A DNA stretch of 64,000 nucleotides from Mytilus californianus (taxonomy: Eukaryota). Below, piece after piece: positions 28,259-53,600 of the stretch (position 1 is its first letter; every line of letters starts with the position of its first letter). The stretch lies in the NCBI RefSeq assembly GCF_021869535.1, contig NW_026262745.1, positions 8,494,001 through 8,558,000 of the forward strand, read 5' to 3'. Both the position numbers and the translations under genes were made by a program. Under the pieces are notes generated by a model that was not told the origin of the DNA, did not search any database, and saw only the letters and a program-made list of their open reading frames with translations.

Positions 28259-28882
28259 GAACGAAATGGGATGAGGGGTTAACATTTTTGAGAATGCAAC
28301 TTTCCCAAAAAGATCAGTTTTTCAAACATTTAAAACCTATTTTTTTATGAGTGACTGAAAGGTTGTTATATACACTAGTAAAGTTTATTACGAGGTTTAA
28401 CATCTATCAATTCAAAAGGAAGTTGTGATACGTCCAGATTTTACTTGCCATCTTTCTTCCCTTTCAGGTTTTCCTCCTAGTCATGATAAATATGTGTAGG
28501 TTTAATGTGATGTAATATATCAATTGGGAGCTATTCTATGTCAGACAAAGAGCCACTGGAAAGGGTTTTAAAAACTTCTAGTTATATTTTTGACATAACA
28601 AAAACTTTCAATTTATATATTTTATTAACAATAATTTATAATTGTAATTTTATAACAGTGACTGTGTCAAAAATTTAGATTAATAATTTCATTTCCTAAT
28701 TACAAATTCCAGATGATATTCAAGATAAATGAAATTATTTAAATTAAGTAAAAAAAAACTTTATAATTACAAAAATTAATGTCTGCCCTAATTTAATGTC
28801 TGTGTCGCTATAGCTACAAACACAATAAAAAAACTGGCATGTGTATTCTGTCTTCTGTTGGATTTAGTAAACAAATCTTCTT

Positions 28883-28914
28883 TCAGTAACCATGTGATGA
28901 ATTTGACGATTTAC
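28883..28914 (-). CDS. Candidate ubinuclein terminal exon B
   Basis: Strong acceptor ttgttgttttattttgcag. Phase-1 compatible, encodes GKSSNSSHGY*. AATAAA on the minus strand near 28620. Confidence 0.4.
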
Positions 28915-29140
28915 CTGCAAAATAAAACAACAAATTTACTTAGATTAATTAATTAATTAGAATACTCCAGGATCTTTTTTATGATTTGATAACTCTACTG
29001 TCCCTAATCAGCATCATGTAAAATTGTCAGTGATGGAAAAATGAGTTAAGTATACAGAAAATGAATCAGAAATGTGTTATAAAGTGGAATAATGCACTGT
29101 TTATCCCTGATATGCTACACTCACAGAACTAATTTTTCTC

Positions 29141-29710
29141 ATAATTAAAGAACCTTATTGAGCGTGCTCACATACCCCATTTCCCCACATTGTCATTGGA
29201 GAAATAAAATAAGTGTAAGAAAAAAAAATTGAATCATAATTTCCTGTCAATATGCACATCTACATAGTATGTCCTTATTATCTACACAGTTTCATGAAAT
29301 TCTGTTGTGTGGTTTGAGAGGAGTTGTGATGACAAAAGGTTGCAGCAGTATATTGGGCAAATAAGTACAAAGGGGCGTAACTCCTAGAAAAAAAATTGAA
29401 TCGTAATTTCCTGTCGATATGCACATCTACGTAGTATGTCCTTATTATCCGAAAAGGTTTCATGAAATTCTGTTGTGTGGTTTGAGAGGAGTTGCGATGA
29501 CAAAAGGTTGCAGTAGTATATTGGGCAAATAAGTACAAAGGGGCGTTACTCCTGGAAAAAAAATTGAAACGTAATTTCCTGTTGATATGCACAACTACAT
29601 AGTATGTCCTTATTATCTAAAAAGGTTTCGTGAAATTTCTGTTGTGTGGTTTGAGAGGAGTTGCGATGACAAGAAACAGGACTGACGGACTGACGGACGG
29701 ACAGACAGAT

Positions 29711-29743
<33 letters not shown>

Positions 29744-29762
29744 TGTTGCGTGGGGTATAATA
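29141..29762 (-). mobile_element. Helentron-type element with about 3 units of roughly 168 bp
   Basis: Repeated tatgtccttattatc..gaaattctgttgtgtggtttgagaggagttg units, GACG/GACT microsatellite, and terminal hairpin ataccctccgcaacttgttgcgtggggtat. Confidence 0.7.
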
Positions 29763-30888
29763 AATAAAAGCAGAAATAACTATTCCAGAGCCAATCAATG
29801 AACAAATCAAAATAAACAAATCCAGACAGCCAATAGTGGAAATCTACTTTCAGTGGAATAGATTAGTCTGATATTTTAGAACCAAGTCTTTACTAGCCAA
29901 TGGTAACATATTTATTTATACGCATTCTACCCATCTTCATGATCTTATTGTGTATCAACTTTCAAATATTTCTATTTGCTTTTTATACACAAGAATTACA
30001 AACACATATAGTTTCTACAACTGCATGGCCATCAAGTGTGATACAATATTTCTCCAAAAGAGACAGAAATTTTTCAAATTTAATCACAAGACTTGTTGGG
30101 TTCTGTAAATGTTTAGTTTTTTTTTTTTTACATTTTCGAGAGAGGAATAATATCGTATTGCACAAGATTCTTTTATTGGAATCTCTTTATCATTTATAGA
30201 CAATATGAAGACAAACTTTTATCTTTCTTTTTCAATGATCTGCAAAAATATGCTTTCTTTCTATGTGATGTCATCAGGCATGGTTCCCATTTGTTCCCGA
30301 TGTCATAATAGCAAATTCAGAGGAAAGCAAGAAAATTTGACATTACCATTACATTTGACCAGTGAACAGATGAGATCAAATGTACCACAAACTGATACTC
30401 AATCAGTTGTTGAAAGAATTAACGGCTAAGAATTAGAGAAAAATAAATTTACTGACACACTTCAATCAAGAGTTAATCAATAAATACTGTGACATTTAAT
30501 AAAGAAAATTAAAGAGGTTGTGACAAATAGACAAAAGAAGAAAAGGTGATCATAAATCCAAAGAAAAGTCAATTCAGAAGTCATAAACTGGATATATATA
30601 TATATATATTTATATACATAGTAGTAAATACAAGTACATTGTATGTGTAATACAATCGATGGCAATCATGCTGTATCAGCCATCGGTGATGATATCGATA
30701 TCAGTCACGGTTGCAAAGGCTTTATCAAACCCCTAATCTGTATGATGTCACGAAATCGATATCAGTCACCGTTACAAGGGCTTTATCAAACCCCTTATAT
30801 ATGTTTTACGTCATGTCACGTGAAAAAACATCTAAATTAGTTGTATTTGAGGTACATGTATATAATAAAGTGTATATGATATGGCTAT

Positions 30889-30990
30889 TTCAATATCACA
30901 CTCTGTATCAACCCTCAACCAACATAATCCTTCCAGCAGAGCTCTTGGGATTATATTGGTGTCTCGGGTTGATACAGGTGTGATATTGAA
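30889..30990. repeat. Roughly 100-bp imperfect palindrome (fold-back element)
   Basis: ttcaatatcacactctgtatcaaccc pairs with gggttgatacaggtgtgatattgaa; an inner aacataatcc/ggattatatt stem is also present. Confidence 0.75.
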
Positions 30991-33028
30991 AAAGCCATAT
31001 GATATTTTCTCTCTCTCTCTATATATATATATATACCATGTACCATATATACACAACAAGAGTGCACACACTGTATTTGGTATATTTAGATTTCTAATTT
31101 CAGAACCATAATATAATGCCTCATACAAATACTAATCATGATCAATATCATTTTCTGAAAGTTCTTTAATGATACATGAAATATATTTATAAAAGGCCTT
31201 CGGAACTTTGTATAATGTGTATCTGAATGAAGGTTATCCTAAAAAGCATAAGTTGGTTCATCAAATATATTACAAACCACTATCTAACACGAACAATTTA
31301 GTTTCTTCTCACCTACTTTACTGACCATGACGATAAAGGTTTTACTACAAATATAACATAAACATAACATTATCAATGATCCTTGACTATGAGGTCAAGG
31401 TCAGATAAACCCTACCTGACAGACATATACACCTTACAATCATTTCATACTTCATATATAGTTTACCTATTGCTTATAGTATCTAAGAAGACCAAACTAC
31501 TGACACTTGACATTGACCAATAAACCAGGAAAATCAGGTTAAGACAGATGATACCTGCCAGACAGACATGTAAAACTTACAACCAATGAATCCATATACC
31601 AAACATAGTTGACCTATTGCTTATAATATTTGAAAAACAGACCAAAACACACACAAAAATCAAAGCAAGGACAATGGACATATGAATAATATTTTTTTCT
31701 TACATTTCTATCTTAAACTGAATGCTCTGTAATCTATATAGATACTGCATGATTTAGCTAAACCAACTATAATTATTACAAATCAAAAATAGGCAATATT
31801 TTTCAATACTCATACAATTGTTCCCTTAGTGCAGGTCAATGTCCATGCTAGCAATACAATTAAATACCATACAATCTAGTCATGCTAGTAGTATAAAACA
31901 GTGTGGTATGATTGCCAATGAGACAACTTATAAGTGTGTGCAATAGTTTCTTCTCACTTTTAACACATAATACCTGATTTTCATAAGTAGTCATTGATTT
32001 GCATTTTTCTATCAAACATAACTAAAACATTAAAACAACTATGACTTGGAAGATTCAAGTATTAATAATGTATTGATACGTGTGATTCAACAAGAATAAG
32101 GAGAAACAGGCTCCTTCTAATCAAATGTATTTTAGAGTATATCAAATGGAGATAAGTATTTTTTATATAAAATGAAACAAATCCAAATGTTCTAGAAGTT
32201 TCTTTCTGAGATAAATTTTTTTACACACTGGTCAACCTAGGTTATTAATGGATGCTTTACACATATATAATATATATTATAAAATTGAGAATGGAAATGG
32301 GGAATGTGTCAAAGAGACAACAACCCGACCATAGAACAGACAACAGCAGAAGGTCACCAACAGGTCTTCAATGCAGCGAGAAATTCCCGCACCCGGAGGT
32401 GTCCTTCAGCTGGCCCCTAATATATATATATATTTAAGAGTTTTTATTGTTTAAGTACTCGAGAGGCTACAATAGACAGGTTATCCTGTTTTATATATGT
32501 ATGGCTTTCACATATATGTATAAGGTTCAAGCATTCACCAAATATGTTATTTCTACATAACTTTGAATCACCATGGAAAACATATTTAAATTTTTAAAAC
32601 AAAAACAAAACACACAGAGGCACATGGAGCTGTCTTATAAATTATGGTAGTTCCAAATGGAATTTCCCACAAAATCTTGTGTGTAGAAATTAGCAATTAA
32701 TGATTGTGTTAGAATTCCAATACAAAACATGGCTACTAAAATACAGTATCTTAGCATCATTGGTGATACTTTTACAATCTGACAACAATTGAGTGAACCG
32801 TACACTAAGACAAAGCAAATTCTTACATTTCTTGAAATATACATTAATAGTGTATCAATAAAATCAGGCCCTTTTACCAAAATAATTATCTATGCAAGAA
32901 TAGAAACTTAAAAGAGAAACATCCAGATAAGAATGTTTAACTAGCATAATTTTGACACTTAGCCCAAAGAGCATAGAAACTTCTAATAGCCCATGCAAAA
33001 GATATGATGTTCGAAATAAAAATTATGA

Positions 33029-33183
33029 AATAATTCATGGGGGCTTGAAATTATATTGATTTTACCACGGGTGGCCCTTTATGCTAAATATTTTACCTCG
33101 AGTCATAGCGAGGGGTAAAATATGGGCAAAAAAGGGCGAGCCCATGGTGAAATCAATATAAATTCAAGCCCCCATGGATTATT
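33029..33183. repeat. Roughly 155-bp imperfect palindrome (fold-back element)
   Basis: aataattcatgggggcttgaaattatattgattttacca pairs with tggtgaaatcaatataaattcaagcccccatggattatt; inner atattttacctcg/cgaggggtaaaatat stem. Confidence 0.8.
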
Positions 33184-34548
33184 TTTATTCTAATAGGACA
33201 ATGATGGCAATTCTATTTGATCCAAGTGATCTAGGTAATGGAAAATATTTGCTGTTCCTATATTAAACACACTATTATCATTGATGTAAAAGACGAAGAA
33301 AACTGAATTAGTGATATGCTTAAAAGATTGACAATAACTTACTAAGACAGGTTTGGATGAAGTTGAATGATTATCTTACTTTTATTTAAGAAAATGGGTT
33401 TTCGACAAATTCTAATCATCATTTATTTATGTTTTCAGGTTTTGACTACTTTCAGTTTTTCGTAGAATGCTTATAGGTTCTTGTCATCGTTCAATGACGA
33501 CATTTACAACATCTGACCTCGGGTAACTCATTCATTAAAAGCATACGACATGGGAGTAAGATTTAATCAGCCCAAACAAATTATGATATTGCTGAATTTA
33601 TTCGTATTTTACCACAGGTGTGTACTCAACGGGTTTGAAGAACGTCATATTAGAATAATCATTAGACTATAAAAATAAAATGATAGACATGCAATCTTAC
33701 CAAAATATGGACTACATGCAACTCTACATTATAAAGAGATTGGAATACAAATTTAGGACGTAAACACACAAATATATGTATCAAACAAAATGTGATTCAT
33801 CTCAAGATTATTCTCACAACCTAAGATTGCTTCATTAAAACATAAAATACTCAAGGAAGACTCTAAACTCTTCTGATGAATGAAACTGCAGAGAAATGAA
33901 GGTTTCTGACAATTTTCAGTCTTCCCATGGTAGTATGTATGTCTGAATGAAACATCTCTATAAATCATGATTATTTGTGATGATATAAAAGTTTGAAAAT
34001 CAATTGTTACTAATAGAGTCCTAAATTGGGTTCCTAACAGAGTAACTGTTTATGAATCAAGCATATCCATTTTGTAAACAGGTTTCACATCATTTAACAT
34101 AAATCTCTTATACCATAATGGCCTAAGGTGGAAATTATATATCAATTTCTGTTATGGTTAGTTCATTACTAGGATATACTTTCTTATAAATCATTTACAC
34201 AAGATGAATACTGAAGTAAATAATTGAAATATGACCTTGACCATGAACAGTTACTCTAAAAAGACTATAGAGTTTACATACAATGCTTATTACACAACAC
34301 CACACAGGGACTTTTACCTGTATAGTAAGTTCCATAGGGATAAGTTGATTGTTGTGTGGTAAAGGGTGGGAAAAATCCTGTAATATCACCATATATACAT
34401 AAGATAAACACATCTTTAATTTCAGTTTAAAAAACATTTAATAAAATATTTTCTACGGTCATGTACCATTTGGTTTCCATAAAGCAAAAGGCTTAATACT
34501 ATGCAAAGATAATGTACCAGTTGTAGTAGAGATGTCAATAACCTTGCA

Positions 34549-34745
34549 TCAGTATGTTTGATCATAAACATCATCTAGATTGTTTAATATATGAATGTTA
34601 TGTCTTGTTTTTCCAGGTATCAATGGCTTTAAAAAGAGAACTGTTAGGAAATTTAACTTGCAGGGATGGTTAGACCCACATAAGTGTAATTTTATTGTTA
34701 TTTCGAACAATCCATTCATGTTAGGGATAAACCCCATCAATCTTC
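34549..34745 (-). CDS. Candidate ubinuclein terminal exon A
   Basis: Acceptor catacattttag. Phase-1 compatible and open for 64 codons (GRLMGFIPNMNGLF..) to TGA. No recognisable homology. Confidence 0.35.
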
Positions 34746-35622
34746 CTAAAATGTATGTTAATTCAAACTAAGATTTCTTAATTCAAGAAACAATAAATAT
34801 ATCTGCAAATTTGTACAAAAATTCCTTAAAATTGCCTTGTAAATAGCACAATCAGGATATACAACTCTGGTTGTTCCAGAAAAAAAATCAAGTCTTTCAT
34901 GGCTTTTAAAATTCTGTAGGAGGTAGAGCAATAAAGTGAATTTCTTATGAAATAAGCTGTAAAATTCTGTATGTACAAATGTATCTTTTGTAGGAGTCCT
35001 AAGAAAGTACCTTCGATGACTCACATTGTTTTTCTAAACATCTCTCATTTTATGAAATATTATTTACAACATGTATTATTCTTAATAAAATTCACAAATT
35101 GTAGGTAAAAGCTCTTAATGACTTTGTGCTTTGCAACACCTTCATATTAAAACTATGAATTAACTAGTAATTCTATTGCTTGATTTATGTACTAGTTCTA
35201 AAAATTCATATACCGTAGATTCATTCATTTTCATGAGTACCAGTTTTAGTGGAATGAGAAAAATTGCATTTTTGTGGATACTTGATTTTGTGGTTTAGCC
35301 AATTTATGCATATAAGCCTATAGAAAGATTGTTTTAATTTACCTATTCCAACTGAAACTCACGGAAACTTTTGAAATCCCATGAATTTTATAAAGCGTCC
35401 AAAGTAAAAATACTATTGGATGACTGCACTTATAAAAAATACTACCTAGAACCTACTGTATACTTTACATACATATATTAATGATGGATATCTGATTTCT
35501 ATAATTACCTGCTGGACTTTGTTGTGTTTCAGTTGTTATAAATGGTATGTTTTGACTGACATAAATGTGCTATATGAAATGTAACTATATTTATATATTT
35601 ATATATTGTTTTCTATAATTAC

Positions 35623-38600
35623 CTGCTTGACTCTGTAAATTAGCGTTTGGTTGTCCTTGTAATAAAGGACTTGTTGGAACATAATTATTACCTGGATGGT
35701 TACCAAGGCCTAAAATAAGAAACATTTCATGTCTTAAAAATCCAAATTTTTTAAATTTTTTTAAGAGTTTTTTTTATTTCTAATAATACTAAACATATGG
35801 CACCAATAAAAAAAAATACAAAATCAAATCATAGAATGGCTTAGAAACTGGTAGAATACGAGGCTTTGCAGAGAATAACTTATTTTTCAAGCTAAGTACA
35901 AATAAAATGTATGTTTGGAGACAATATATTGTTCTTATCTTTATACTGCAACACTTAAAACCTTTTATTTTACAAATGAAATATTTTGGGTAAAAATCAA
36001 CAATTAGGAGTTTGAAATGGACGACACAAAATTTCCCCAACCTACAGAAACACATTATCATTGTCACAAACAAGTCAGTGACTTAATATCACAAATGAAT
36101 ATTCAATATAATTTGATTGGCAAATAACACAGTTGCAGTATAAATCTTCATATTTTCATATGAGATAACCATAAACATTTTTTTTTTTTCAAGTTTTATA
36201 TCCTTTTTTACATGTAATAATGGTATTAAAGCCATTTTAATTGGGTTTTGTATTAACAAGTTTTATAAAGGTTTTATTTTCATGTCTTGTCTCTCCGTTT
36301 TTTTTATATTACTGATGGTACCTTCAGAATGTTCTAATGAGTTTTTCTTGGTGTGGGTGTAGAAAACTGAAATGCCCTACTCAGTAAAATCATGGTGAAT
36401 TATTATATTAAATCGCAAATATATAGCAAAATTCCTAACTGGTTATTTTCTTTGCCCAACAAGACTGTTCATTTTATATTATGCCAATGAAATACACAGA
36501 CTTATCAGACAAAAAAAATTACAAAAATTGATATATTGTGATAATATGCTACCATCATTTCTGTTGCTTACCAGTTCTATGAAACAAACTTACCCTGAGG
36601 TATGCTGTTGTGTAGCAGTGATTTTACTGTAGACTTACCCTGAGGTATGCTGTTGTGTAGCAGTGATTTTACTGTAGACTTACCCTGAGGTATGCTGTTG
36701 TGTAGCAATGATTTTACTGTAGACTTACCCTGAGGAATACTGTTGTGTAGCAGTGATTTTACTGTAGACTTACCCTGAGGTATGTTGTTGTGTAGCAGTG
36801 ATTTTACTGTAGACTTACCCTGAGGTATGTTGTTGTGTAGCAGTGATTTTACTATACTTACCCTGAGGTATGCTGTTGTGTAGCAGTGATCTTACTCGTG
36901 TTACTGTAGACTTACCCTGAGGTATGTTGTTGTGTAACTGATTTTACTGTAGACTTACCCTGAGGTATGCTATTGTGTAGCAGTGATTTTACTGTAGACT
37001 TACCCTGAGGTATGCTGTTGTGTAGCAGTGATTTTACTGTAGACTTACCCTGAGGTATGTTGTTGTGTAGCAGTGATTTTACTGTAGACTTACCCTGAGG
37101 TATGCTGTTGAGTAGCAGTGATTTTAATGTAGACTTACCCTGAGGTATGCTATTGTGTAGCAGTGATTTTACTGTAGACTTACCCTGAGGTATGCTGTTG
37201 TGTAGCAGTGATTTTATTGTAGACCTACCCTGAGGTATGTTGTTGTGCAGCAGTGATTTTACTGTAGACTTACCCTGAGGTATGCTGTTGTGTAGCAGTG
37301 ATTTTATTGTAGACTTACCCTGAGGTATGTTGTTGTGTAGCAATGATTTTATTGTAGACTTACCCTGAGGTATGTTGTTGTGTAGCAATGATTTTACTGT
37401 AGACTTACCCTGAGGTATGTTGTTGTGCAGCAGTGATTTTACTGTAGACTTACCCTGAGGTATGTTATTGTGTAGCAATGATTTTACTGTAGACTTACCC
37501 TGAGGTATGTTGTTGTGCAGCAGTGATTTTACTGTAGACTTACATTGAGGTATGTTGTTGTGCAGCAGTGATTTTACTGTAGACTTACCCTGAGGTATGT
37601 TGTTGTGTAGCAGTGATTTCATGGTAGGAGAATGTGGTGGTGGTTGTATTCCTCCTGTTTCTTTATTGAAAGATGATAGTTTTATACTCTGGTACCCTGG
37701 AACTGGTTTAGGCATTCCTGGTAGAGCATATGATGAAGGAGATGTGTTTGAAGGTTTTGTTTGCACTATTGAAGTCATACTCCATATAGGAGAAGCACTA
37801 GTTTTACCTTGTGGTGGTGTGGAACGGTTAACAACACCAGAAGGTGACGGGGATTTCTGTTGTACATGGGCCTGGTCAATTTGACCAAACAGACTTTGTA
37901 ATAAATTAGTTGCAGTTGCCTCCCCTTTTGAAGGACTTGTCAAACTAGCAACTGAATGTGGACTATGATAGCTGCCACTAGATTTAGAGGGTGACTGTCT
38001 TTGTCCTCCCCCTGGGGATGCCAAGGGGGAGACATGATGAGCTGATATGTGTGCTGACGTTGGTGATATTCTTAGTCCCTGAATTTGGTTTCCTGTTTGC
38101 ATGGACACTGAACCCTGAGATATTGAACGCACCAGAGTTGGTTTTTTAGCACTATCTAAACTATTATTTCCTATGTTTGGTGGAGAATATTTTGTGACTG
38201 CAGGTCTTCCATGAAGAGAAGTCCCAGAATGCACTACAATAGTTTTTGGTTTATTAACTCGCTGAGTAGTAACAGTTTTTGGTTTTCCATCTCCGTGATG
38301 ACTTTGGGAAAGTTGTTTCTCTCGACTTTCAAGAAATTGTTTATATGCATCTTGATTTATCAATGATGTAATGTTCCCTGATGCAGCCTTCTGAGTCAGA
38401 TACGAAGCTAACTGGGCATTAGTAACTTGCTTTTGATGTGCTTGAGTCGGTGATTGTTTTTGATGTGCTTGAGTCGGTGATTGCTTTTGATGTGCTTGAG
38501 TGGGTGTTTGCTTTGGTGCCTGTGCTGCTTTCAACTTTTGAACCATTTGATGAGCATCCTGTGGTTTTATCTGTAGTGATGACTGTACAGCATGTTGCTG

Positions 38601-41600
38601 GTGACCTTTTGTTGGTGAAGTTTTGCTTTCTTCCTTCCCAAGCTGATGTTGAAACACAGAAGATGCATAATTCTGAAATTGTGCTAGAAAAGTTGAATCC
38701 TTTTTATTTTCAGACTGCTGGGCTACATGGCTAATATTATTAGTAGTATTTTGTCCTGAGGTTGGAGATGTTAGGGATGATCTTAAAATATCAGAAACCA
38801 CATGATCCCAAGATCTATCACCTATGTATTTTTGAGATGCTGCCGAAGATGCCAGTAGTGAAAGTCCAGGTGATGTAGCACTAACACTACTTCCTGTTTT
38901 CTCTTTATTTCCTGTCATCATCTTGTCTGCTGCAGATTTTGCCAATGAAGATGACTGCTCATTCGCATAATCTAATAAGGTGGGAATGATTTTACCAGCA
39001 TCCCCTGAACCTGGTGGTCTCACTGGAGTGCTTCCTGGAAAAACAGGCTTCTGGGATAGTCCTTGTGCACTAGCTGGGGTAACACCCTGTTTTGTTACCA
39101 TTAGGGGGGCACTTGATGGGGTTATTCCTTGCTTAGTTGTCATGGTTGGTGTGTTGGCAGCAGAATTTGATGTTTTGGTTATCACTGGCACTTTCTTGAT
39201 CTTTGGTCTGAAAAAGATGTTAAGCACTTATTTCAAATTTTCAAGACAGTTATTGGAACTATATATTAACTGAAGAAAACAATTGTGGATGTGATAAAAA
39301 CAGTTACTCACCAATCAATCCCATCAAAATATAAATAAACAAAAACCTTCTACATTGTTCACTAATCTTGTTACCACTATGGCTATTATTTTACATTCGT
39401 TTTCATTTAACATCTGAGTAATAAATTCTGTATTAACTAGCTTTGAACAAAAGGGATCAGACTTTTAATCCTTGTTGAAGGACGTACAGTGACCTATAAT
39501 TACTTACTCTATGTCATTTGGTCTCTGGTGATAGTAGTCTCATTGGTAATCCTACCACATCTTATTATTTTTATATTGTCTCAGAGTATGCCATATCTTC
39601 CTTGACATACAATTTTTTATTTTAATGTGAATCTTTTCTTGATTGCTTTGTGCACACTTGGAATAAGCTTTTCCTAAATTAGCTTTTCCTACAGAATATT
39701 TAAGTCTTTACTCATTTTCTGATAATCAGTGATTTTTTCTAAAAAGGTTACTATCAATTCCTGCACCTGAGGTGATAAATACTTACGGGTTTGTCCAGGC
39801 TACATGTCCTGGTCTACTTTCTTTGAATAGAACACTGAAATGAAACCATTCTTATTATAATAGCATTCAATATGTGTAAATATGTGTTAACAAGACACAA
39901 GTTGATAACAATGATTATGTAAATACTAGATGAACCAATCCAATGACTGTATAGTGTTGACTGGCAGCGGCATATACCACTTCTTAGCTATAAATAGATC
40001 ACATTATAAAATTGTTTTCATATTTCTATTTTTTTAACAAATAACAAATCAACAGCTGAAACAGTATTCAGTACAAGATTATTCGAAGTGAATATGTCTT
40101 TTTGAACACAGAAACAATGAACTATATGTGTTTAAAAAAATATTTTAAATCTTTTTACCCCTTGTAATCATTTATCTTTGATGGTATGATGTTACACATC
40201 CAGCAAATAACCATAAAACTTTATTGTGTACCAGAGCATGTTAATGTGATATGATTTGTAATACATATACAGAACCATATTTATTACATGCTAGGTCACA
40301 AGGTTAAGTCAATCAAATGAATTACAACTACCTGAAAGCATTCAAAATCCAGGCCATTCAATCTTGTCTACCTGAAAGCATTCAAAATCCAGGCCATTCA
40401 ATCTTGTCTACCTGAAAGCATTCAAAATCCAGGCCATTCAGTCTTGTCTACTTGTTTTAAATACAGCATGCTTAGCAGTGAATCAGCAAGTATCAATTTT
40501 AAGGTCTATGGTACTAGTAATGAAACTTGGGATGTAATGCATGACCTTCCACACTCAAGGCCAGCATGCCATTTCCATTGCAATATTTCACTTTGATTGA
40601 TTGGAGGATTGTTGTTTGTTTTAAGTCCAGTAGCAAATGTTTCATGCATGTTGAGGATGAGAACCATTTAACTATGAAGGTTTATGATTATTTTTTTTTG
40701 TATTTTACCTGGTTTGCATCCATCCTTTTGGCCATAGTATTTTAACCTCTCTTTCAATAAATGTCTTCAAGTATTCCTCAGCTGTTTGTGTTCTTGTTTT
40801 CATGTAATTATAGATCTTCATCTTAACACGAACAACATCACACAACAATGCCCTAATAAAGAAAATCAATTGTAATATCAACAGCAGCAGGAAAATCAAT
40901 GTAAATAAAATGCTCCGCAGGGCGCAGCTTGATGAGACCGCAGAGGTCGAACCCTGAACAGTTGGGGCAAGTATGGACACAACATTCAAGCTTGATACAG
41001 CTCTGAATTTGGATTGTGATTAAATATTTGACACAGCATAGGTTTCTGACACAGAATGAATGTGGTCTAAGAACTTAAAAAATTTAAATTGGACATTCAC
41101 CTATTATGAGCCAATATCCAAAATCTAAATACATGGTTAGATTCAGCACATCAAAGAACCCCAAGAATTCAATTTTTGATGAAATCAAACAAAGTTTAAT
41201 TTTGGACCCTTTTGACCTCAATGTGGACAAAGTTGATAATGGGGCCCAAAAATAAAAAATCTAAGTACATGGTTAGATTCAGCATATCAAAGAACCCCAT
41301 ATATTCAATTTTTGTTGAAATCAAACAAAGTTTAATTTTGGACCCCGATTTGGACCAACTTGAAAACTGGGCCCATAATCAAAAATATAAATACATGTTT
41401 AGATTCAGCATATCAAAGAACCCTAAGAATTCAATTTTTGTTAAAATCAAACTAAGTTTAATTTTGGACCCTTTGGACCTTAATGTAGACCAATTTGAAA
41501 ACGGAACCAAAAATTAAGAATCTAAATACACGGTTAGATTCGGCATATCAAAGAACCCCAATAATTCAATTTTTGATGAAATCAAACAAAGTTTATTTTG

Positions 41601-44600
41601 GACCCTTTTGACCTCAATGTGGACAAAGTTGATAATGGGGCCCAAAAATAAAAAATCTAAGTACATGGTTAGATTCAGCATATCAAAGAACCCCATATAT
41701 TCAATTTTTGTTGAAATCAAACAAAGTTTAATTTTGGACCCCGATTTGGACCAACTTGAAAACTGGGCCCATAATCAAAAATATAAATACATGTTTAGAT
41801 TCAGCATATCAAAGAACCCTAAGAATTCAATTTTTGTTAAAATCAAACTAAGTTTAATTTTGGACCCTTTGGACCTTAATGTAGACCAATTTGAAAACGG
41901 AACCAAAAATTAAGAATCTAAATACACGGTTAGATTCGGCATATCAAAGAACCCCAATAATTCAATTTTTGATGAAATCAAACAAAGTTTAATTTTGGAC
42001 CCTTTGGACCTCAATGTGGACCAATTTAAAAACGGGGCCCAAAATCCAAAAACTTAATATACGGTTAGAATCAGGATATTAAAGAACCCCAAGAATTCAA
42101 GAATAAAACCCCATTGAAATTGGTCAAGAAATAAGCAATTTATACGAAGTATCTTCTTTTGCACAATACTGTGCAATTGAATATTTCTTGCTATTGCGCA
42201 ATACTGTACAATTGACAATTTCTTGCTATTGCGCAATATTGTGCTATTGGATATTTCTTGCTATTGCACAATACTGTGCAATTGAAGATTTCTTGCTATT
42301 GCGCAATACTGTGCAATTGAAGATTTCTTGCTATTGTGCAATACTATGCAATTGAAAATTTCTTGCTATTGCACAATACTTATTATATAATAATTTACAC
42401 ATCCTGTTTGGTGTGTATCTTCTTCCATATCATTATTATTTGCTTTTAAATATAAAACAGAAATAACCAACTTAAAATGGAAAATTTTAAAAAAAGAAAA
42501 AAAAAGGAAAAAAAAATCCCCCCCCCCAAATTTTTTGAACCCCCTTATGATTCATCACCCCCACGCTCAATCCCAGCCTTCCCTTTGTGGTATGGTACCT
42601 TGCAGTACAATTTCAGAGAGATCCATACACTTGAACACAAGTTATTGTCTGGAAACTAGAAAAATGCTTATTTTTGGCCCTTTTTTGGCCCCTTATTCCT
42701 AAACATTTTGGGCAATTACCCCCAAACTCAATTCCAGCTTTCCCTTTGTGATATGGAACCTTGTAGTACAATTTCAGAAAGATCCATACACTTACACACA
42801 AGTTATTATCATGAAACTAGAAAAATGCTTGTTTTTTGCCCCTTTTTTGGCCCCTAATTCCTAATATTTTGAGGCAATTACCCCCAAAATAAATCCCAGC
42901 ATTCCCTGTGTGATATGGAACCTTGTGGTACAATTTTAAAGAGATCCATACACTTGAACACAAGTTATTGTCTGGAAACTAGAAAAATGCTTATTTTTGG
43001 CCCCTTATTCCTAAACGTTTTGGGCAATTACCCCCAAACTCAATTCCAGCTTTCCTTTTGTGATATGGAACCTTGTAGTACAATTTCAGAAAGATCCATA
43101 TACTTACACACAAGTTATTGTCATTAAACTAGATAAATGCTTGTTTTTTGCCCCTTTTTTGGCCCCTAATTCCAAATATTTTGAGGCAATTACCTTACCC
43201 CCCAAAATCAATCCCAGCATTCCCTGTGTGATATGGAACCTTGTAGTACAATGTCAGAGAGATCCATACACTAACACACAAGTTATGTCTGGAAGTTACA
43301 AAAATGCTTATTTTTGGCCCCTTTTTGGCCCCTAATTCCTTAACTGTTGATACCATAACCCCCAAAATCAATCCCAACCTTCCTTTTGTGGTATTAAACC
43401 TTATGGTAAAATTTCATAGAGATCCATTCACTTAAACTAAAGTTAGAGTGCGAAAACCAATGTGTCTTCGGACGACGACGACGACGACGCCAATTTTAAT
43501 TTTTAATTTAAAGAGATAGTGTTTAGAATGTTCAGGACTACTCCTGTTACTGTCATAAATTACCAGAGACAAACTACATTAGTATACTTAAAAGATAAGA
43601 ATATTGTAAATTTTATAAATGAAAAAAGCATGACAGTATAAGGTTTGCAATAACAAAAACTTGCATTCATATTTTCCGTTGTGATTTTCCTTCACTAAAT
43701 TTTTTTTTTGCAATCCCATTCATAAAGTCTCACATTTTTACCATTACTCAGTGCATGCAATAATTTTTGAATTTACCGTATTCAAAATTACCATAATATT
43801 TTTATCCAAATCCAAGCTCAGATTGTGATACGTCAAAGTAAGAACAGGGATCTAGGGTAATCATATCTAAAATCATTTACAGTTTTTCGAGACTTAATGT
43901 TATTTTAGAGCTTGACAAATGGTACAAATACTTGTCTATTATTAAGACAATTGTTGGCTTCACATTTTTTATTATGTTGTTTGTTGATTGGTTGCTACCT
44001 TTTAAATTTATGTTTACCTGTCACCTTTGGTTTATACATATTATGAATCATAAACTTTCTTTTAAAAGATGTAAATACAGAATGTAAATTTGAAATAATT
44101 TCATTTATTTTCACTACAAATAGCTGTATCTGTCCTCAACATTTCTTATTTCATTCATACGCTTCCATCTGTTTAAAAAATAAAAATAAAATTGCGTTTA
44201 AAATTAAAATGCCCCTCAATAGATGGGGTTCTCATAATGTGGTTTATGGTTCAAATAAGGGGAATTATCTGAGGTATGACACATAAAACTTGTCATAAGA
44301 GACCTTGTCTAGGGTAAAGTAGTTTCTAACATGTAACTTTTTCAAAAATCAAACTCCTTATCAATAGGAAAGTTCAAATTAAATCATTACCTACTTAATC
44401 AAGAGGCGTAATTTTGAAACTTATAAATTAAAATACATTAATGTTAAACTTTGCTTTTGTTTAGAGCCATTTAAAGAGTAGTTTATATTATAGTGTGTAA
44501 ACATTGTGAAACCACGTTTGGAGATTTGTAGAAAACGACAGAAATGACCCCTTTGAGTCACAATAGCTTCATTGTCTGGTAACACAGTAATATAAATACC

Positions 44601-47600
44601 TAAGATTTTCATTCCATTCAAATTTTTTCTTTGGTGCTGCCACTTTTTTCTTAGTGGGTTCCTGGTTTGTATTTGTTTTTTCTCCTTCCTCTTCAGAATC
44701 CTCAGTATCACCATCTTTACCCTCTGGTTTGTTCTCCTCTGGTTTGTTGGCATCATTTTCTGCCTGCTTCTGTTTCCTGTTAAAAAATGGCAGAAAATTT
44801 TAAATGAAAAAAAAAATAAAAATAACAGAACCACATTGTATATCTAGAAAAAATTCATTTTGAACTATGTTTTTTTTACAGAATTATTGGACATACATGT
44901 ATATGAAGTAATATGGTGACTTTTAGATTTCAAAAGCATGCCTTTGAAATTGAGCCAAGTTTCATTGAAGGTCAAATGAACTTCCTTCAAGGTGTTGGGG
45001 GGCCTTTCAGAAATGTTGACCTTGAAGCATTCTGGGTAGTTGAGCAGCATTTTTATGTCACTAGTAGACATTCATTTAAATATTTAAAGTATTTTATTCT
45101 ATTTGTCTATGAGCACGTTAATCTACTGTTGTTTTGTCTATTGGGTATTGATTTTCGTGGATTTCAATGGTACAAGTGAACCACCAATTTAACTGTTCAT
45201 CAAACGAAAATATTCTATGGGCTTTTACACAGAATGAAACCATGAAATCATGAATCTACAAAAAATGCAATTATTCCAAGATCCAAGCAAAATTGGTACC
45301 AACATAAGTAAATATATTCACAGTATCATGTTTTTATTTATAGCAGGAGTATTTTCTCTCTTATCTTGAAACACAAGTGTCTTTTATCCTGCACTTTTTA
45401 TATATGTAACACTCAGGAACGTGTCCGATTCCCCCCCAAACGTGTCCATATTACGTCACTGAACTGCAAAACATGTCTAGGTGCTAAAGGGCGCCAAAAC
45501 GTGTCATTTTTAAGAACGCCCAAACATGTACATTCCCCTAAACGTGTCCATATACAGCCTAAAGGCTTCTTTTTATGAAAGCTCAATTTAATTAAGTTAA
45601 TTTTTGGCCTTCAAGTAACAATAAAATGTCCACAAATATTAAATATATAATTTTATTATTGTTTTTCTTTTAACATAGACTCCTTTTAATACACGTTCAG
45701 TCAGAATGGGGATGTTTAATCTGAAATCTTGTAAAGGAAGAGATAGACCAACCTAATGTATTTATTGTTAATATGTTATAGTCCTGAATATGCATGAAAT
45801 ATTTGCCACTGGATGTTTAGCAACCAAAAATCAATCAATTTATTGTTTTAGATATGCATGAAATAATTGCCACAAGCAACAATCAGTTAATCTTTTACTT
45901 TTCCTATTTGATTATTACCTCTTTCACTATTGATTTAACGTAATGTGACAGTTAAAAGGAGGATGCATATTCAAAATTACTTTCGGTTATGAATTATAAG
46001 GTTGGTATCAGGGATACTAATGATACATGCACATTTATTCCTCTTGCTTATGTCTCTTTATTGATGCTCGAACCCAAAAACTTAATCCCAGTACATACTT
46101 TGAAGAGCTGATAAAAACTAGAGGCTCTAAAGAGCCTGTGTCGCTCACCTTGGTCTATGTGCATATTAAACAAAGGACACAGATGGATTCATGACAAAAT
46201 TGTGTTTTGGTGATGGTGATGTGTTTGTAGATCTTACTTTACTGAACATTCTTGCTCCTTACTATTATCTCTATCAATAATGAACTTGACCCGGTAGTTA
46301 CAGTGGAAAATATTTTGTAAAAATTTACAAAAATTTACAAAATTTATGAAAATTGTAAAAAATTGACTATAAAGGGCAATAACTTCTTAAGGGGTCAATT
46401 GACAGTTTTGGTCATGTTGACTTATTTGTAGATCTAACTTTGCTGTACATTATTGCTGTTCACAGTTTATCTCTATCTATAATAATATTCAAGATAATAA
46501 CCAAAAGCTGCAAAATTTTCTTAAAATTACCAATTCAGGGGCAGCAACCCAACAACGTGTTGCCTGATTGATTAGTCTGAAAATTTCAGGGCAGATAGAT
46601 CTTGACCTCATGAACAATTTTATCCTCATCAGATTTGCTCTAAATGCTTTGGTTTCAGAGATATGAGCCAAAAACTGCATTTTACCCTATGTACTATTTT
46701 TTAGCCATGTCAGCCATCTTGGTTCGCGGGCGGGGTCATCGGACACATTTTTTAAACTAGATACCCTAATGATGATTGTGGACAAGTTTGGTTAAATTTG
46801 TCTTAGTAGTTTCAGAGGAGAAGATTTTTGTAAAAGATTACAAATATTTACGAAAAATGGTTAAAAATTGACTATAAAGGGCAATAACTCCTTAAGGGGT
46901 CAACTGACCATTTTGGTCAAGTTGACTTATTTGTAGATCTTACTTTGCTGAACATTATTGCTGTTTACAGTTTATCTCTATCTATAATAATATTCAAGAT
47001 AATAACCAAAAACGGCAAAATTTCCTTAAAATTACCAATTCAGGGGCAGCAACCCAACAACGGGTTGTCCGATTCATCTGAAAATTTCAGGGCAGATAGA
47101 TCTTGACCTGATAAACGATTTAACCCATGTCAGATTTGCTCTAAATGCTTTGGTTTCTGAGATATAAGCCAAAATCGACATTTTACTCCTATGTTCTATT
47201 TTTAGCCATGGCGGCCATCTTGGTTGGTTGTCCGGGTCACCGGACACATTTTTTAAACTAGATACCCAATGATGATTGTGGCCAAGTTTGGTCAAATTTG
47301 GCCCAGTAGTTTCAGAGGAGAAGATTTTTGTAAAAGTTATGGACGACGACGACGATGGACGACGGACGCCAAGTGATGAGAAAAGCTCACTTGGCCCTTT
47401 GGGCCAGGTGAGCTAAAAATCAGTGCAATATTCTCAAACATCATTAATATGCATGTAGTTAGACATCACCGGAGTATATTGGTACAAAAGAATTCACCTA
47501 GTAAACAATGAATTTAACTGTACAAAACTAATTAATTGCAATTTGTTTATGTTCGCTCTAAACATGCATGTAATATTTGTCACTGGACATTAAGCAATCA

Positions 47601-50600
47601 ACAGTAAAGAGTTAATTTATATGTTGCAAATCAAACTTGCAATTATGCTAAATATGAACAACCAGCATTGAATAAATAAGTGCTAATAAATTTTGGATGT
47701 TCTTCTTTCAACTCTGTTCCTTTTTTAATTGCCAGTAATTGTGCCCAAAAAACTTCAGCATTTATGTCCTTTGAATGCGGCTTTAATCTTTTTTTAGGAT
47801 TCCAACATCTTCAATCGTAGAATGAATTGCTGTAAACGTTATTGACACCAATGAGGACATAATAGCGCTAAAAGTTTTGAGACGTTCTTGTGTTTTAAAG
47901 TGGAAACGTTTTGGCGAAAAACAATTATCGGACACGTTTGGGGGATGTGAAATCAGACACGTTTGGGCGTTTTATGATTTTACGGACACGTTTGGGCGTT
48001 TTATGATTTTACGGACACGTTTGGGCGGATGGACACGTTTGGGAGTGTTACATATATAAATATATATCATATATGTATAATAGACAAGAATTTCTAATTA
48101 GACAAAACATTCAACTGACATTAATATGTAAAATAATCCTTAAAAGATTCTCAAAGGCATGGTTTGATTTTTTGTTCAGATTCCACTATTCATTTTTCTA
48201 TGATGTATTATACATAAATACATAACTTGTAAAAGAGACAACTAAGACAAAGATTGCTGAATTGCTGAGTTAGCAACAAGTCATATATATATATAGATTG
48301 ATGAGAACAAAATGTAATTCATGTGAGATTGAACAAAGAAGGGCAAAATACAAGTATAATTACCAAATCTGAAATTCTGCATCATGTTTCTCTTGTTGTG
48401 CTTGCATAACAATTGCAATAGCTGAAAAATCAAGTTTATATTAAAAAAAAAAAATTTTTAAATAGGAAATGGAATGTCTTGATTTATTAAATCATTGGGT
48501 AGCATTCTCATTTAAGCAATACATTTATTCATAAATAACATTACTTTGTACAGCTAATTAGTTACCTGACAGAAATTGACCCAAAAGCCAAATCCAACAA
48601 TGAATATATTCAATATACATTGAAAGTCAATATTTCTAACTCACTCCTATAAAGATATAAACTAAGAAAAAGTTCAGATCATTTTATATTTGAAATGGAT
48701 ATCTTGAAAATTTGGAACTGTTATCTTTTGTATACTGTAAATTCAGAAATTATTGCATGCATTTATTATTGTGAATTTTGAAGAATGGACAAAAATGCGA
48801 GTTTAATTATTGTGATTTCTTTGAAATCTGCATACAGTTATATGGATCCGATATCAGAATGCCAGTTTTTATTATTGCGATACTCGTTCAGTCACATTAT
48901 TCGCATTAAAAAACCTCACAATAATTTTTGAATTTACAGTAACCATCAATAAAGAGCTATAGAATCATATTGTTAACTTCCCAAACAATGATTTAGATAG
49001 ACAGCATCTTAATATCACACAAGTTGTACCACCTTTATATTTCAGGGGTTCAAATTAACATTTGGTACTGGAAGGTCCAGGACCGTTGACACTCCGAACT
49101 GAAAGGTCCACAACCCAAATCCCAGGTAATACTTTTACATGAATTATTTCATAACTCATTAAGATACAAAACGTATGTGCTTCTGGTGTTAGGTTAGATT
49201 GTTTCATCATATTTTAACTGCATGTAAAGTTTTTTTTAATGGAGAAGGTCCGATAAGGGCTAATTATGGACTAAAATTTGAAGTACATCTGATGAAATAT
49301 TTTTGTCATTTTTTATACAATTAAGTGTCTACTTCAGTCGATTCAATTAGTTTATGTTAAAGATTTTAACTGTTTTGGTCATCAAAGAGGCTCAAATTCA
49401 TGCTTAAATATGAAAAATCTATAATATATGCCATAAAATTTCACTTTTCAGATGGTTTTGTTCTAAAATGGAAGTGGCCGCATTCGTGTTCAGTCTTAAC
49501 ATTTATATATGTTATGTAATATCAATAAATACAACATATATCTAAATATTAAGACTGAACACAGCCACTTCCATTTTAGATAAAAACCGTCTTAAAATTA
49601 ACACAAATGCTAAAATTGTGAAGATTTCAGTAATTCTGCATGAAATAATGATGCTAGTACCTGATGCATGTCCATTGTACTGTCAAAAACAGCCCATATT
49701 TATATAACAAAAGAATTCTTACTTTCAAATAAAAAGCTAAAAGTTTACATTTTCAACAAATTTGTAAAACGCTGTATTTTGGGGCCAAAAAGGGGTCTTA
49801 CCGGACCTACTTCTTTACAAATATATTGCCAGGCAACCATATAGTACCAAACATATTAAGACTGAACACGGCCACTTCCATTTTAGATGAAAACCGTCAT
49901 CAAAATCTACCCACGGTCTTTTAATTTTTCAGTGGGGCTTAAATCAAATTTCCGTTCCCGTTCACGATCATTGTGTTGGTCTTTAGTGATGATTTTCATT
50001 TAATTTCTTTCATTATGTTGCCAAGGAAGACGTTAAAGACCGTTCATCATCTCGGGCTTTCTCTTGGAAGACGTATCACCAAAGCAAAACAGACTCATTT
50101 TGTTTTTCGCAAATGTCTAAATGATTTGTCACGTGATTTCTCGCAACTATTTATAACCTTGTGTTTCCAAGAAATACTAAGTTAAAAATAACTTTTATCA
50201 CTCGTTGGCAAGGTCAGGGATGAAACATTTTATTATCTCAATTTCAATAATAATATGGCTTTGAAATGACAATACTGATGGTTAAAAAGGTCGGCAAAAT
50301 TAATTTTTATTTATTTTGAGTTTCAAATCGAACAAATCGAAGGTCCGTCGGGCGTACCTAATAACCAAAACGAAAGTCCGATTGCAACAGTGGAAGGTCA
50401 CGGACCTTGGACCACCACTAATTTTAACCCCTGATATTTCCACTGCTCAATTGCTATTTTGCAGCACAAATAATTTATTTCATGCAATTTAAGGAAATAG
50501 TAAGTTTCCATCAGATTTTTCAGTAAACAAATGTTAATTTTTTTTTTTTCTTTGGTAAAAATTTTTGTGGATACCAGAAAGCCAGATGATTTAGGAAACA

Positions 50601-53600
50601 AATGTAATTTTTTTGGATTTCACTATTTCATAGATTTAACACATATTAGTTTTAAAGTCTATACACAATTTGTAATTTATTAAATACTAAAATTCTTGTT
50701 TCACCTTATCTCACAAATTCCATGAAAAATAGTACTGGAAAATCATAAATCCAGAATAGATAGTCATAATATTATGATTACCATCTTTAAGTTTCTGTAA
50801 CGGTCCTTTCAGCTGATCCTCTTGTCTATCTAACCTCAGTTTCTTTGCTCTCTTTAGTAATGTATCTTTGGTACAAGGTAGGAACCAGGCTAAATGTCCA
50901 AATATAACTGATCTCTGACTGCATGGTAACTGTCTTGTTGTCAGTTCAATTCTGTAAAAGATTTGTAAAAGCTGATAAATATTTGAATTTTTTTCTATTT
51001 TAGCGACGGTGAGTAATGGACCAAAATACAATATAAGTTATTATGACTTCAGGTAATACTCCATACAAAAAATACTATCAAAATCAGAAATGCAAGATTT
51101 TATTTTTGCAAAACAATCCTATTACAATTTTCCCAATAATAAAAACATCCCATAGTTTTCAGGCTGTTTTGTCATTGAATTTTAATCAAAATCAACTTTC
51201 ATCTATCAATCTATCAACATTTAGCACTTGTTTTCCTTAAAAAAATTATTCCTGTATTTTTCCCCCCTTTGAAACTTATTTCCAAGTTAGAAACAGATAG
51301 TACTCAAAGATTAACATTTTGAAGGTTTTATTTCGGTCTTTTATGCTGCCACCCTTTCCTAAGTTGGTTCCTGGGTTTGTCTTTCATCTCTTTCTATTAA
51401 AGATAGATTTTTTTAACCCAGTTGAAACAGTTTTTTTCATTTCATTTAACTTAACCTCCAAGGGATGTCTTGCTTTGTGTGTTATGTGATCAGTGTTTGT
51501 ACATTGGTATTTAAAAGACTGCTGAGGGTTTCAACTCCAAAAATGAATAACTGTTTTATTTACTTTCATTGATTGAAGAAAAAATTTATTTTTCATGGAT
51601 AATTGATTCTTTGGTTTTGCATACAAGTCTATCGAAAATTTGAACTTCATTGAACATTTAAATTTCTGATTAACCTACACAGTATCCTATATTTTTAACC
51701 ATCTTTCATAGAATACTTACTCTAACAACATTTCACTGACTTCTCCATTGAAAAACTTTCCTTTGCTAACATTAGAACACTTTGCAGTCTGGAAAATTAT
51801 ACAATTAATTCAGTTCATTTTTAGTTTATTACTTACAAACAAAATTTTATAAGACAGTTATGTATTATTGATGCTTGCATCATCATTTTTTGTTTAACCT
51901 AACTATTTTCCGACTCTCCATACATCTTTTTCTATTCAGCTCTATAAAATGGCAATCACTATTAATATGCATTAAAGTAAAACATAATAAATGGGGAATG
52001 TGTCCATTGGACACAGATGATGCCCCCGCTTGCATATCATAATAAAGTTATAAAGGACATAACTGAAGAACGGTAAAAGTGAAACTACACAAATTTGTAC
52101 TTGATCTGAGTTTTGTGGTAATAAGTATTATGTATAAGTTTCATAACATTTGGTTGGGGCAAACTTAAGTTAGAGAACGGAAACGAAAAATTCAGCTTTT
52201 TTCCATTTGTAAATGGGCATAACTCTAGAACAGTAAAAGTAACACCACCAAAATTCAAATTTGATCTGTATTTTGTGGTAATAAGCATTGTGAATAAGTT
52301 TCACTACGTTTGGTTGATGCTAACTAAAGTTAGAGAACAGAAACGAAAAAATTCAGCAATTTTTCAATTTGTAAACAGGCATAACTCTAGCACGGTTTTA
52401 GTGACACCACCCAAATTCATACTTGATCTGTATTTTGTGGTTATAAGCATTGTGTAAAAGTTTCATAACATTTGGTTGAGGCAAAATAAAGTTCGAGAAT
52501 GGAAACGACATTTGTAAAGGGGCATAACTCTAGAACAGTTGAAGTGACGCCCCCAAAATTCAAACTTGATCTGTGTTTTGTGGTAATAAGCATTGTGTAT
52601 AAGTTTCGTAACGTTTGGTTGAGGCAAACTAAAATTAGAGAAAGCAAACTAACTTTGGGACGTACAGACGGACGGACAAGGGTAAAACTTAATGCCCCCT
52701 CCACTACGGCGGGGGCATAACAAACCTTTTTAATTAAAATAATAGCATGCATCATTCATATAGTTTGCTACAACCAAAATTTTTTAGTAAGAATACATTG
52801 CTTTAATTCAAACACTTATTTTTGAATGATTCATGAATAGAATAAACTAAATAATATTTCGTTTTGCATATATGTACCTCTTTCAGTTTATCAATAATTT
52901 TGAGAAAATCTGGTTTGAGTCCGTCCGGTAACTTAGGTGCAGATTCTGGTTTTTTCTCTTCATTACCATCTTTACTGTTTGAGTCTGTCATACCAATCAC
53001 TGAATCAAACACGGCATCAAGCTTGTCACCTTTACTCATGGCTATTACAGAATCAATCACAGAGTCTATACCTTCGTCTTGTGACGATCCCTCCTGTGAT
53101 GACTGACTGTTAACATTGGGTGTTATTCTCCCGTTCATATTTGATTCTGGACCAGCAGTAGATTCTGTTTGTTGTTTTAGTAACTCGGCCACAGTTGGTG
53201 ACATTTTCTTTCTGTCAAAACAAGGCATAATTTATAATACAATCATTTATATCATGTATAAGTAGACTTAGTATAACCTTTCTGTTTCCTAGAAACCTCA
53301 AAGACTATTTTATTATAATCTAGTACTACCTTAGTCAGTTCATTAAATTGAGTCATTATATCAAACATGACCATACCAGAAGTTTGCTTGAGATCTATAA
53401 GATATGGTATTCAGGATCTTCACAGGAGATATGGGATCATACTCCATATCAAAATAAGAATTAATTCATGTAAGACATAGATTTGTTGGAAATTTTCACT
53501 TGGTCTTGGTCGCTATATTCAAATTTTATCCCGAGCAATTCCTCACACATAAATGTACATGTATCGTAACCTAAATGCAAACAATATGTCAATTTTTATC

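What the first reader, a model, noticed from the sequence alone, without database searches (positions are those of the whole stretch)
36588..37630. Ubinuclein minisatellite that multiplies a 5' splice site 23 times, 15 of them in frame
Seen in the sequence: the 45-bp unit consists of the last part of the large exon plus GTAAGT (CCT CAG G|GTAAGT CTACAGT..). The final unit runs into unique intron sequence (G|GTAAGTTTGTTTC at 36589), so the array arose by tandem duplication across the exon-intron boundary. Because the unit is 45 nt, each of the first 15 donors is in phase 1 and compatible with the next exon (35709). Each skipped donor would add 15 aa ([15 protein letters not shown]). A 2-nt deletion then shifts the frame and stops it at 36912. 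Two donors are variant (CAAT|GTAAGT near 37539, GTAGGT near 37224). Inference: the locus could yield a ladder of ubinuclein isoforms whose range depends on VNTR allele length, with distal donors feeding NMD. Alternatively the array could act as a U1 snRNP sink while only the first donor is used.
Basis: partly seen in the sequence, partly recalled or inferred. Interest (0 to 1): 0.8.

Follow-up and report, generated by a model that had tools for sequence, protein, structure and literature searches.

The report
Splice-junction minisatellite in mussel ubinuclein
A California mussel gene carries a tandem repeat that copies its own exon-intron junction, and so its splice signal, 23 times; this is real but a known repeat type, and available RNA and annotation use only the first copy.

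Summary
On the minus strand of the Mytilus californianus ubinuclein gene, a 45-bp unit is repeated head to tail about 23 times. The unit is the last 39 nt of the 1.6-kb exon plus GTAAGT. This gives 23 GTA[AG]GT donors. The first 15 are in phase 1 and in an open frame. Units 16-18 carry indels, and the read-through stops at 36914-36912.

M. trossulus, M. edulis and M. galloprovincialis have one copy, followed by the same GTAAGTTTGT that flanks the last unit here. M. coruscus has an orthologous array of about 15 donors.

The functional reading is not supported:
- In M. coruscus only donors 1-2 are in frame.
- Unit decay fits neutral divergence.
- Both RefSeq models of the California mussel, and an M. 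coruscus transcript contig, join donor 1 to exon 35709.
- No protein with the repeated 15-aa unit turned up in the protein collection.

The kind is known: "mirages" in amphioxus, and human F7, IFI6, CBS, LMNB2 and PDGFA, where the most upstream donor dominates. The scan already noted six such repeats in two other genes of this genome. Minor use of the decoy donors remains untested.

The parts
28753..62211 (-). Ubinuclein gene of Mytilus californianus (XP_052078802.1 / XP_052078803.1), about 16 coding exons
   Evidence: tblastn of P0041 on the window, 100% in most exons. L003 from GCA_021869535.1 contains window 36000-39300 exactly. Pfam HUN and UBN_AB on the gene product.
37589..39207 (-). Large coding exon (1619 nt, residues 562-1101 of P0041)
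37583..37588 (-). Donor 1 (AGG|GTAAGT), the donor used in the annotated models and in the M. coruscus transcript
36588..37627 (-). 45-bp minisatellite of 23 units. Each unit is the last 39 nt of the exon plus GTAAGT. Unit 1 is the authentic junction.
36953..37582 (-). Units 2-15: 14 decoy donors in phase 1, in an open frame that would add 15 aa per unit. Donor 2 is weakened (AAT|GTAAGT) and donor 9 is GTAGGT.
36813..36952 (-). Units 16-18, of 43, 54 and 43 nt. These indels break the frame. The read-through stop TAA is at 36914-36912.
36588..36812 (-). Units 19-23: decoy donors in phase 0, incompatible with the next exon. They keep the ancestral AGC variant.
35710..36587 (-). Unique remainder of the intron. 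It starts TTGTTT, as in the single-copy species.
35623..35709 (-). Next coding exon (87 nt, enters and leaves in phase 1)
34318..34377 (-). 20-aa cassette exon, present in isoform X1 and skipped in X2

Best explanation
This is a lineage-specific junction minisatellite of the 'mirage' type. In the common ancestor of M. californianus and M. coruscus, a 45-bp segment was duplicated in tandem and then amplified by slippage or unequal exchange. The segment is the last 39 nt of the large ubinuclein exon plus the first 6 nt of the intron. The array now lies functionally inside the intron. The spliceosome uses the first, most upstream donor, and the 22 downstream copies are removed with the intron. 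The copies decay at about the neutral rate. The run of 15 in-frame donors follows from a unit length that happens to be a multiple of 3, and from indels having hit only units 16-18 so far. Shown here: the array, its origin, its species distribution, and the use of donor 1 in the models and in one transcript contig. Inferred: that the decoys are largely silent in M. californianus, and why they would be (preference for the upstream site, as shown experimentally for human F7).
For: - Structure and statistics of the array.
- Single copy with the same downstream flank in M. trossulus, M. edulis and M. galloprovincialis.
- An orthologous array with the same unit boundaries and the same consensus in M. 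coruscus.
- M. coruscus has indels from unit 3 on, leaving only donors 1-2 in phase 1 and a stop after 50 codons.
- M. californianus RefSeq isoforms X1 and X2 both read ...IPQG|LGNHPG..., which is donor 1.
- The Logan transcript contig L002 is M. coruscus (99.6-100% identical to L004) and joins donor 1 to the next exon.
- No protein with the repeated unit was found.
- Units differ from their consensus at 30 of 855 positions (3.5%). The between-species divergence is dS 0.058, and 5-8% in orthologous introns, so about 3% per lineage.
- The duplicated peptide lies in a segment not conserved in oysters or scallops.
- Literature: in F7, LMNB2 and PDGFA only the upstream donor is used, and amphioxus mirages do not disturb splicing (PMC1557585, PMC3087553, PMC3902484).
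Against: - There are no junction counts from M. californianus RNA. Annotation and assembled contigs show only dominant isoforms, and products of donors 16-23 would be removed by NMD.
- The decoys are strong. They can form 7 contiguous Watson-Crick pairs with U1 (positions -1 to +6), as good as or better than the gene's other donors. In IFI6 and CBS two proximal decoys are used (PMC1557585).
- The consensus unit is identical in both species, where about 2.6-3 differences are expected if it evolved as single-copy neutral DNA (P about 0.05-0.07). This is marginal. It is also expected if both arrays still hold decayed copies of the ancestral units.
- Some indels in the M. coruscus array could be assembly errors.
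Confidence: 0.75

Rival explanations
1. Isoform ladder. Several of donors 2-15 are used, giving ubinuclein isoforms longer by multiples of 15 aa. The range depends on the VNTR allele. Distal donors feed NMD.
For: There are 14 in-frame decoys with the same strong core as donor 1. The frame is open through 15 units. Precedent exists in IFI6 and CBS, where two proximal decoys are used (PMC1557585).
Against: Only donor 1 appears in the two RefSeq isoforms and in the M. coruscus contig. No such proteins are in the collection. In-frame capacity is not conserved, with 2 donors in M. coruscus. The nearest decoy here is weakened to AAT|GT. The segment that would be multiplied is a poorly conserved linker.
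Confidence: 0.12
2. Regulatory array. The decoys bind U1 snRNP, or G-triplet factors at CAGGGU. They would act as a sink, as an intronic enhancer of donor 1, or as an in-frame backup if donor 1 is mutated.
For: There are 22 strong U1 sites and one GGG per unit. The array has persisted in two species. In F7 a patient mutation of the authentic site activates the next decoy (PMC1557585).
Against: Three Mytilus species do without the array. Unit decay is neutral-like, and the M. coruscus array is riddled with indels. In F7, mutating the G triplets or changing the repeat number did not change donor choice. Predicted accessibility does not set donor 1 apart from the decoys.
Confidence: 0.08
3. Coding repeat or assembly artefact. 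Either the units are really exonic and translated, with the frame breaks being sequence errors, or the array is a misassembly.
For: The frame is open through 15 units.
Against: An independent assembly of the sister species has the array at the same place. There are no Ns in the window. Transcripts and models contain one unit only. The conserved C-terminal exons must be joined in phase 1.
Confidence: 0.03

Closest known systems
Human F7 intron 7 minisatellite (37 bp x 5-9; Borensztajn et al. 2006, PMC1557585)
   Same: The first monomer spans the exon-intron junction. The authentic donor is followed by identical pseudo-donors, and physiologically only the most upstream one is used.
   Different: The F7 unit holds 4 nt of exon and 33 nt of intron, its donor is weak (UGG/gugggu), and its length is not a multiple of 3. 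Here the unit holds 39 nt of exon and 6 nt of intron, the donor is strong, there are 23 copies, and the unit preserves the frame. Donor choice has not been measured here.
Human IFI6 (6-16) and CBS exon 13/intron 13 minisatellites (Turri 1995; Yang 2000; Lievers 2001, as cited in PMC1557585)
   Same: Many reiterated donors. The authentic donor and the two most proximal decoys are used, which is a short real ladder.
   Different: Their units are shorter. The CBS unit is 31 bp (cited in PMC1557585). The IFI6 unit is 12 nt by my own recollection, not checked here. No use of decoys was seen for the mussel gene in the data available.
Amphioxus 'mirages' (Adh3, globins, TnC, PGBD5; PMC3087553, PMC3902484)
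   Same: Minisatellite-like tandem duplications of exon-intron boundaries in an invertebrate. They have edge units excluded from homogenisation and do not disturb normal splicing.
   Different: A different phylum and different genes. Here the array is shared by two species, and it lets the founding duplication be placed by three single-copy outgroups.
Human LMNB2 and PDGFA junction repeats (100 bp and 81 bp; cited in PMC1557585)
   Same: The exon-intron junction is reiterated through much of the intron, and only the authentic donor is used.
   Different: The units are longer. No sequence relation to the mussel array.

Membership tests
Exon-intron junction minisatellite ('mirage'; F7/IFI6/CBS type) | Head-to-tail tandem array of a short unit (10-160 bp) | tested here: met
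   Period 45, 22.8 copies, 92% matches. Unit table.
Exon-intron junction minisatellite ('mirage'; F7/IFI6/CBS type) | The first unit contains an authentic exon-intron junction | tested here: met
   The RefSeq protein and the transcript contig end the exon at 37589 and resume at 35709. The single-copy orthologues splice at the same place.
Exon-intron junction minisatellite ('mirage'; F7/IFI6/CBS type) | The splice-site consensus is reiterated in the units | tested here: met
   23 GTA[AG]GT donors, 21 of them exact AGG|GTAAGT.
Exon-intron junction minisatellite ('mirage'; F7/IFI6/CBS type) | The normal mRNA contains one copy (the upstream donor is used) | tested here: inconclusive
   Met for the M. 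coruscus transcript contig and for the M. californianus RefSeq models. No read-level data for M. californianus were available.
Exon-intron junction minisatellite ('mirage'; F7/IFI6/CBS type) | Copy number varies between alleles (VNTR) | not testable with these tools
   Only one haplotype per species was available. The species differ: 23 donors against about 15.
Ubinuclein (UBN1/UBN2, HIRA-complex subunit) | HUN domain (PF08729) and UBN_AB middle domain (PF14075) | tested here: met
   Precomputed Pfam hits on the gene product at this locus and on its orthologues. The large exon alone has no real Pfam hit.

The most novel reading that the evidence does not exclude
The decoy donors are not silent. 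M. californianus would make a measurable +15-aa ladder (up to +210 aa) whose extent depends on the VNTR allele, or the array would serve as an in-frame backup that buffers loss of donor 1. That would make it a natural invertebrate test bed for how a spliceosome chooses among 23 equal, strong 5' splice sites behind a 1.6-kb exon.
Probability: 0.12. Interest if true: 0.45.

Novelty: new member of a known kind. Interest (0 to 1): 0.27.

Why it matters
This is a clean, datable example of a junction minisatellite outside chordates. The founding duplication can be read base by base against three single-copy species, and the array can be followed in two descendants. Together with earlier notes of the scan, it suggests such repeats recur in mussel genomes. 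That matters for gene annotation, because there are many equally good donors and read-through ORFs. It also makes a natural substrate for studying 5' splice-site choice. It does not by itself show a new mechanism or a new function.

Tried and rejected
- Pfam scan of the read-through ORF gave only spurious low-complexity hits (RecA_C, DUF5016) caused by the repeat.
- Two searches for proteins carrying the repeated 15-aa unit found nothing. One used the full-length range (424-1349 aa) and one the fragment range (131-417 aa). This says nothing about sizes outside those ranges.
- Exact look-ups of isoform X2 of M. californianus and of the short M. coruscus model, meant to find more transcript contigs, returned nothing on record.
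- Local RNA folding (unpaired probability of positions -3 to +6) gave 0.001-0.026 for all 23 donors. Donor 1 is not more accessible, so structure gives no explanation.
- I tested for constraint on the units. Substitutions per unit fit neutral divergence. The identical consensus in both species is only marginally unexpected.
- I considered the G-triplet enhancer idea, but it failed in the F7 system.
- I considered CTACAG as an internal acceptor that would make 33-nt micro-exons. I rejected it by eye because there is no pyrimidine tract.
- I could not read Turri et al. 1995.
Exon mapping used stored database proteins only.
- No contig that I take for human was met.

Full report
**What is there**

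The window is an exact piece of the Mytilus californianus assembly GCA_021869535.1, scaffold JAKFGE010000009.1.

The ubinuclein gene runs on the minus strand from about 62211 to 28753. It is mapped by the RefSeq protein XP_052078802.1 (P0041), at 100% identity in most exons. Its product carries the HUN and UBN_AB domains. The large exon is 39207-37589. The next exon is 35709-35623. A 20-aa cassette exon lies at 34377-34318.

**The array**

Tandem Repeats Finder reports 36588-37619, period 45, 22.8 copies, 92% matches.

Cutting the minus strand after each GTA[AG]GT gives 23 donors:
- Donors 1-15 (37588 to 36958) are spaced exactly 45 nt apart and are all in phase 1.
- Units 16, 17 and 18 are 43, 54 and 43 nt long.
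- As a result, donors 16-17 are in phase 2 and donors 18-23 are in phase 0.

The ORF 39227-36912 reads through 15 units and stops at TAA 36914-36912, inside donor 16.

The unit is the last 39 nt of the exon plus GTAAGT. The internal units share three substitutions against the exon copy (CTACAGTAAAATC instead of CTACCATGAAATC).

The exact 9-mer AGGGTAAGT occurs 21 times in the window, all in the array, against 0.39 expected. Donor 2 reads AAT|GTAAGT and donor 9 reads GTAGGT.

**Origin**

The orthologous loci of M. trossulus (L001), M. edulis (L005) and M. galloprovincialis (L006) have no 45-bp array. Each has exactly one CCTCAGG|GTAAGT. In all three the intron continues TTGTA or TTATA (GTAAGTTTGT in M. 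trossulus and M. galloprovincialis). In M. californianus the same continuation, TTGTTT, follows the last unit. More distant mytilid homologues also show one unit, followed by unique read-through sequence.

The array is therefore an insertion of 22 extra units exactly at the junction. The rest of the intron is about the same length in M. californianus (878 nt) and M. trossulus (about 750-800 nt, estimated from the coordinates).

M. coruscus (L004) has an array at the same place, with the same unit boundaries and the same consensus unit. It has about 15 GTAAGT donors. The duplication therefore predates the split of these two species and postdates their split from the M. edulis complex.

The 3' units keep the ancestral AGC codon seen in the single-copy species. 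The 5' units and the exon copy carry AAC. This polarity is typical of minisatellite turnover.

**Is there selection for the in-frame ladder?**

In M. coruscus the units measure 45, 29, 32, 45, 45, 82, 11, 48 nt and so on. Only donors 1 and 2 are in phase 1, and the read-through stops after 50 codons. Some of these indels could be assembly errors, but deletions of 13-16 nt are not typical of such errors.

In M. californianus the 19 full-length internal units differ from their consensus at 30 of 855 positions (3.5%), and many of those differences are shared variants. The two species differ by dS 0.058 in the large exon and by 5-8% in most orthologous intron stretches. That is about 3% per lineage, so the units decay about as fast as neutral DNA.

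The consensus unit is identical in both species. If it evolved as single-copy neutral DNA, about 2.6-3 differences would be expected (P about 0.05-0.07). This is marginal. It is also what one expects if both arrays still hold decayed copies of the ancestral units.

All three indels falling in the last 8 of 23 units has a probability of about 0.04 if they were independent. They are adjacent, however, and may be one event.

The peptide that would be multiplied (KSLLHN.IPQG) lies in a stretch that is not conserved in oysters or scallops.

**Which donor is used?**

Both RefSeq isoforms of M. californianus (P0041, 1159 aa; P0042, 1139 aa) read ...[13 protein letters not shown]|[10 protein letters not shown]..., which is donor 1 joined to 35709. 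They differ only by the cassette exon.

The Logan contig L002 (run SRR13891805) is 99.6-100% identical to the M. coruscus locus. It joins the exon end at L004:24026 to the next exon. This is direct transcript evidence from a species that has the array.

Two searches of the large protein collection for the repeated unit found nothing. Their length windows limit what that means.

I had no read-level RNA data, so minor use of the decoys is open. So are NMD-sensitive products of donors 16-23.

The decoys are intrinsically strong. They can form seven contiguous Watson-Crick pairs with the conserved 5' end of U1 (positions -1 to +6). This rests on established knowledge of U1. They are at least as good as the gene's other donors. 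Predicted local structure does not distinguish donor 1 from the decoys.

**Comparison with what is known**

Borensztajn et al. 2006 (PMC1557585) describe exactly this class: minisatellites whose first monomer spans an exon-intron boundary.
- In F7 (37 bp), LMNB2 (100 bp) and PDGFA (81 bp), only the most upstream donor is used.
- In IFI6 and CBS (31 bp), the two most proximal decoys are used as well.
- In F7 the decoys are functional, but they lose to the upstream site whatever the repeat number or the G triplets. Only decoys with perfect consensus start to compete.

In amphioxus the same repeat type is called a "mirage". It occurs in Adh3, globin, TnC and PGBD5 genes and does not disturb splicing (PMC3087553, PMC3902484). 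That note reports six such repeats in two other genes of this genome.

**Verdict**

This is a real and neatly documented junction minisatellite, and a new member of a known kind. The best reading (0.75) is a neutral intronic array with donor 1 in use. The isoform ladder (0.12) and a regulatory role (0.08) are not excluded, but nothing found here supports them.

No sequence that I take for human was met.

Noticed in passing
window 35607-35636 and 35493-35522 (minus strand): A second junction duplicate. A 30-nt copy (90% identical) of the end of exon 35709-35623 plus its donor (AGCAG|GTAATTATAG) lies 114 nt downstream in the intron. It is present only in M. californianus among the five Mytilus loci.
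   Followed up: partly
window 38427-38514: A coding 27-bp repeat of 3.3 copies (QSPTQAHQK) inside the large exon. M. coruscus has 3.4 copies (L004 23104-23196). The M. trossulus protein has one.
   Followed up: partly
window 37543 (donor 2): The decoy nearest the authentic donor is the only one changed at both -2 and -1 (CAAT|GT). [quoted passage not shown] M. coruscus donor 2 is intact, so this may be chance.
   Followed up: no
window 36588-37627: Polarity in the array. Units 2-7, 9 and 13 carry AAC like the exon copy, and most 3' units carry AGC, the state of the exon in the M. edulis complex. This suggests exchange between the exon copy and neighbouring units, which may have changed the coded residue from S to N.
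   Followed up: partly
window 35710-36587 versus L004 24720-25815: The intron stretch just downstream of the array is more diverged between M. californianus and M. coruscus (12.7-16% substitutions, many gaps) than other orthologous introns of the gene (5-8%).
   Followed up: no
window 34318-34377: The 20-aa cassette exon (FFPPFTTQQSTYPYGTYYT) is alternatively included in the annotated isoforms of all five Mytilus species.
   Followed up: partly
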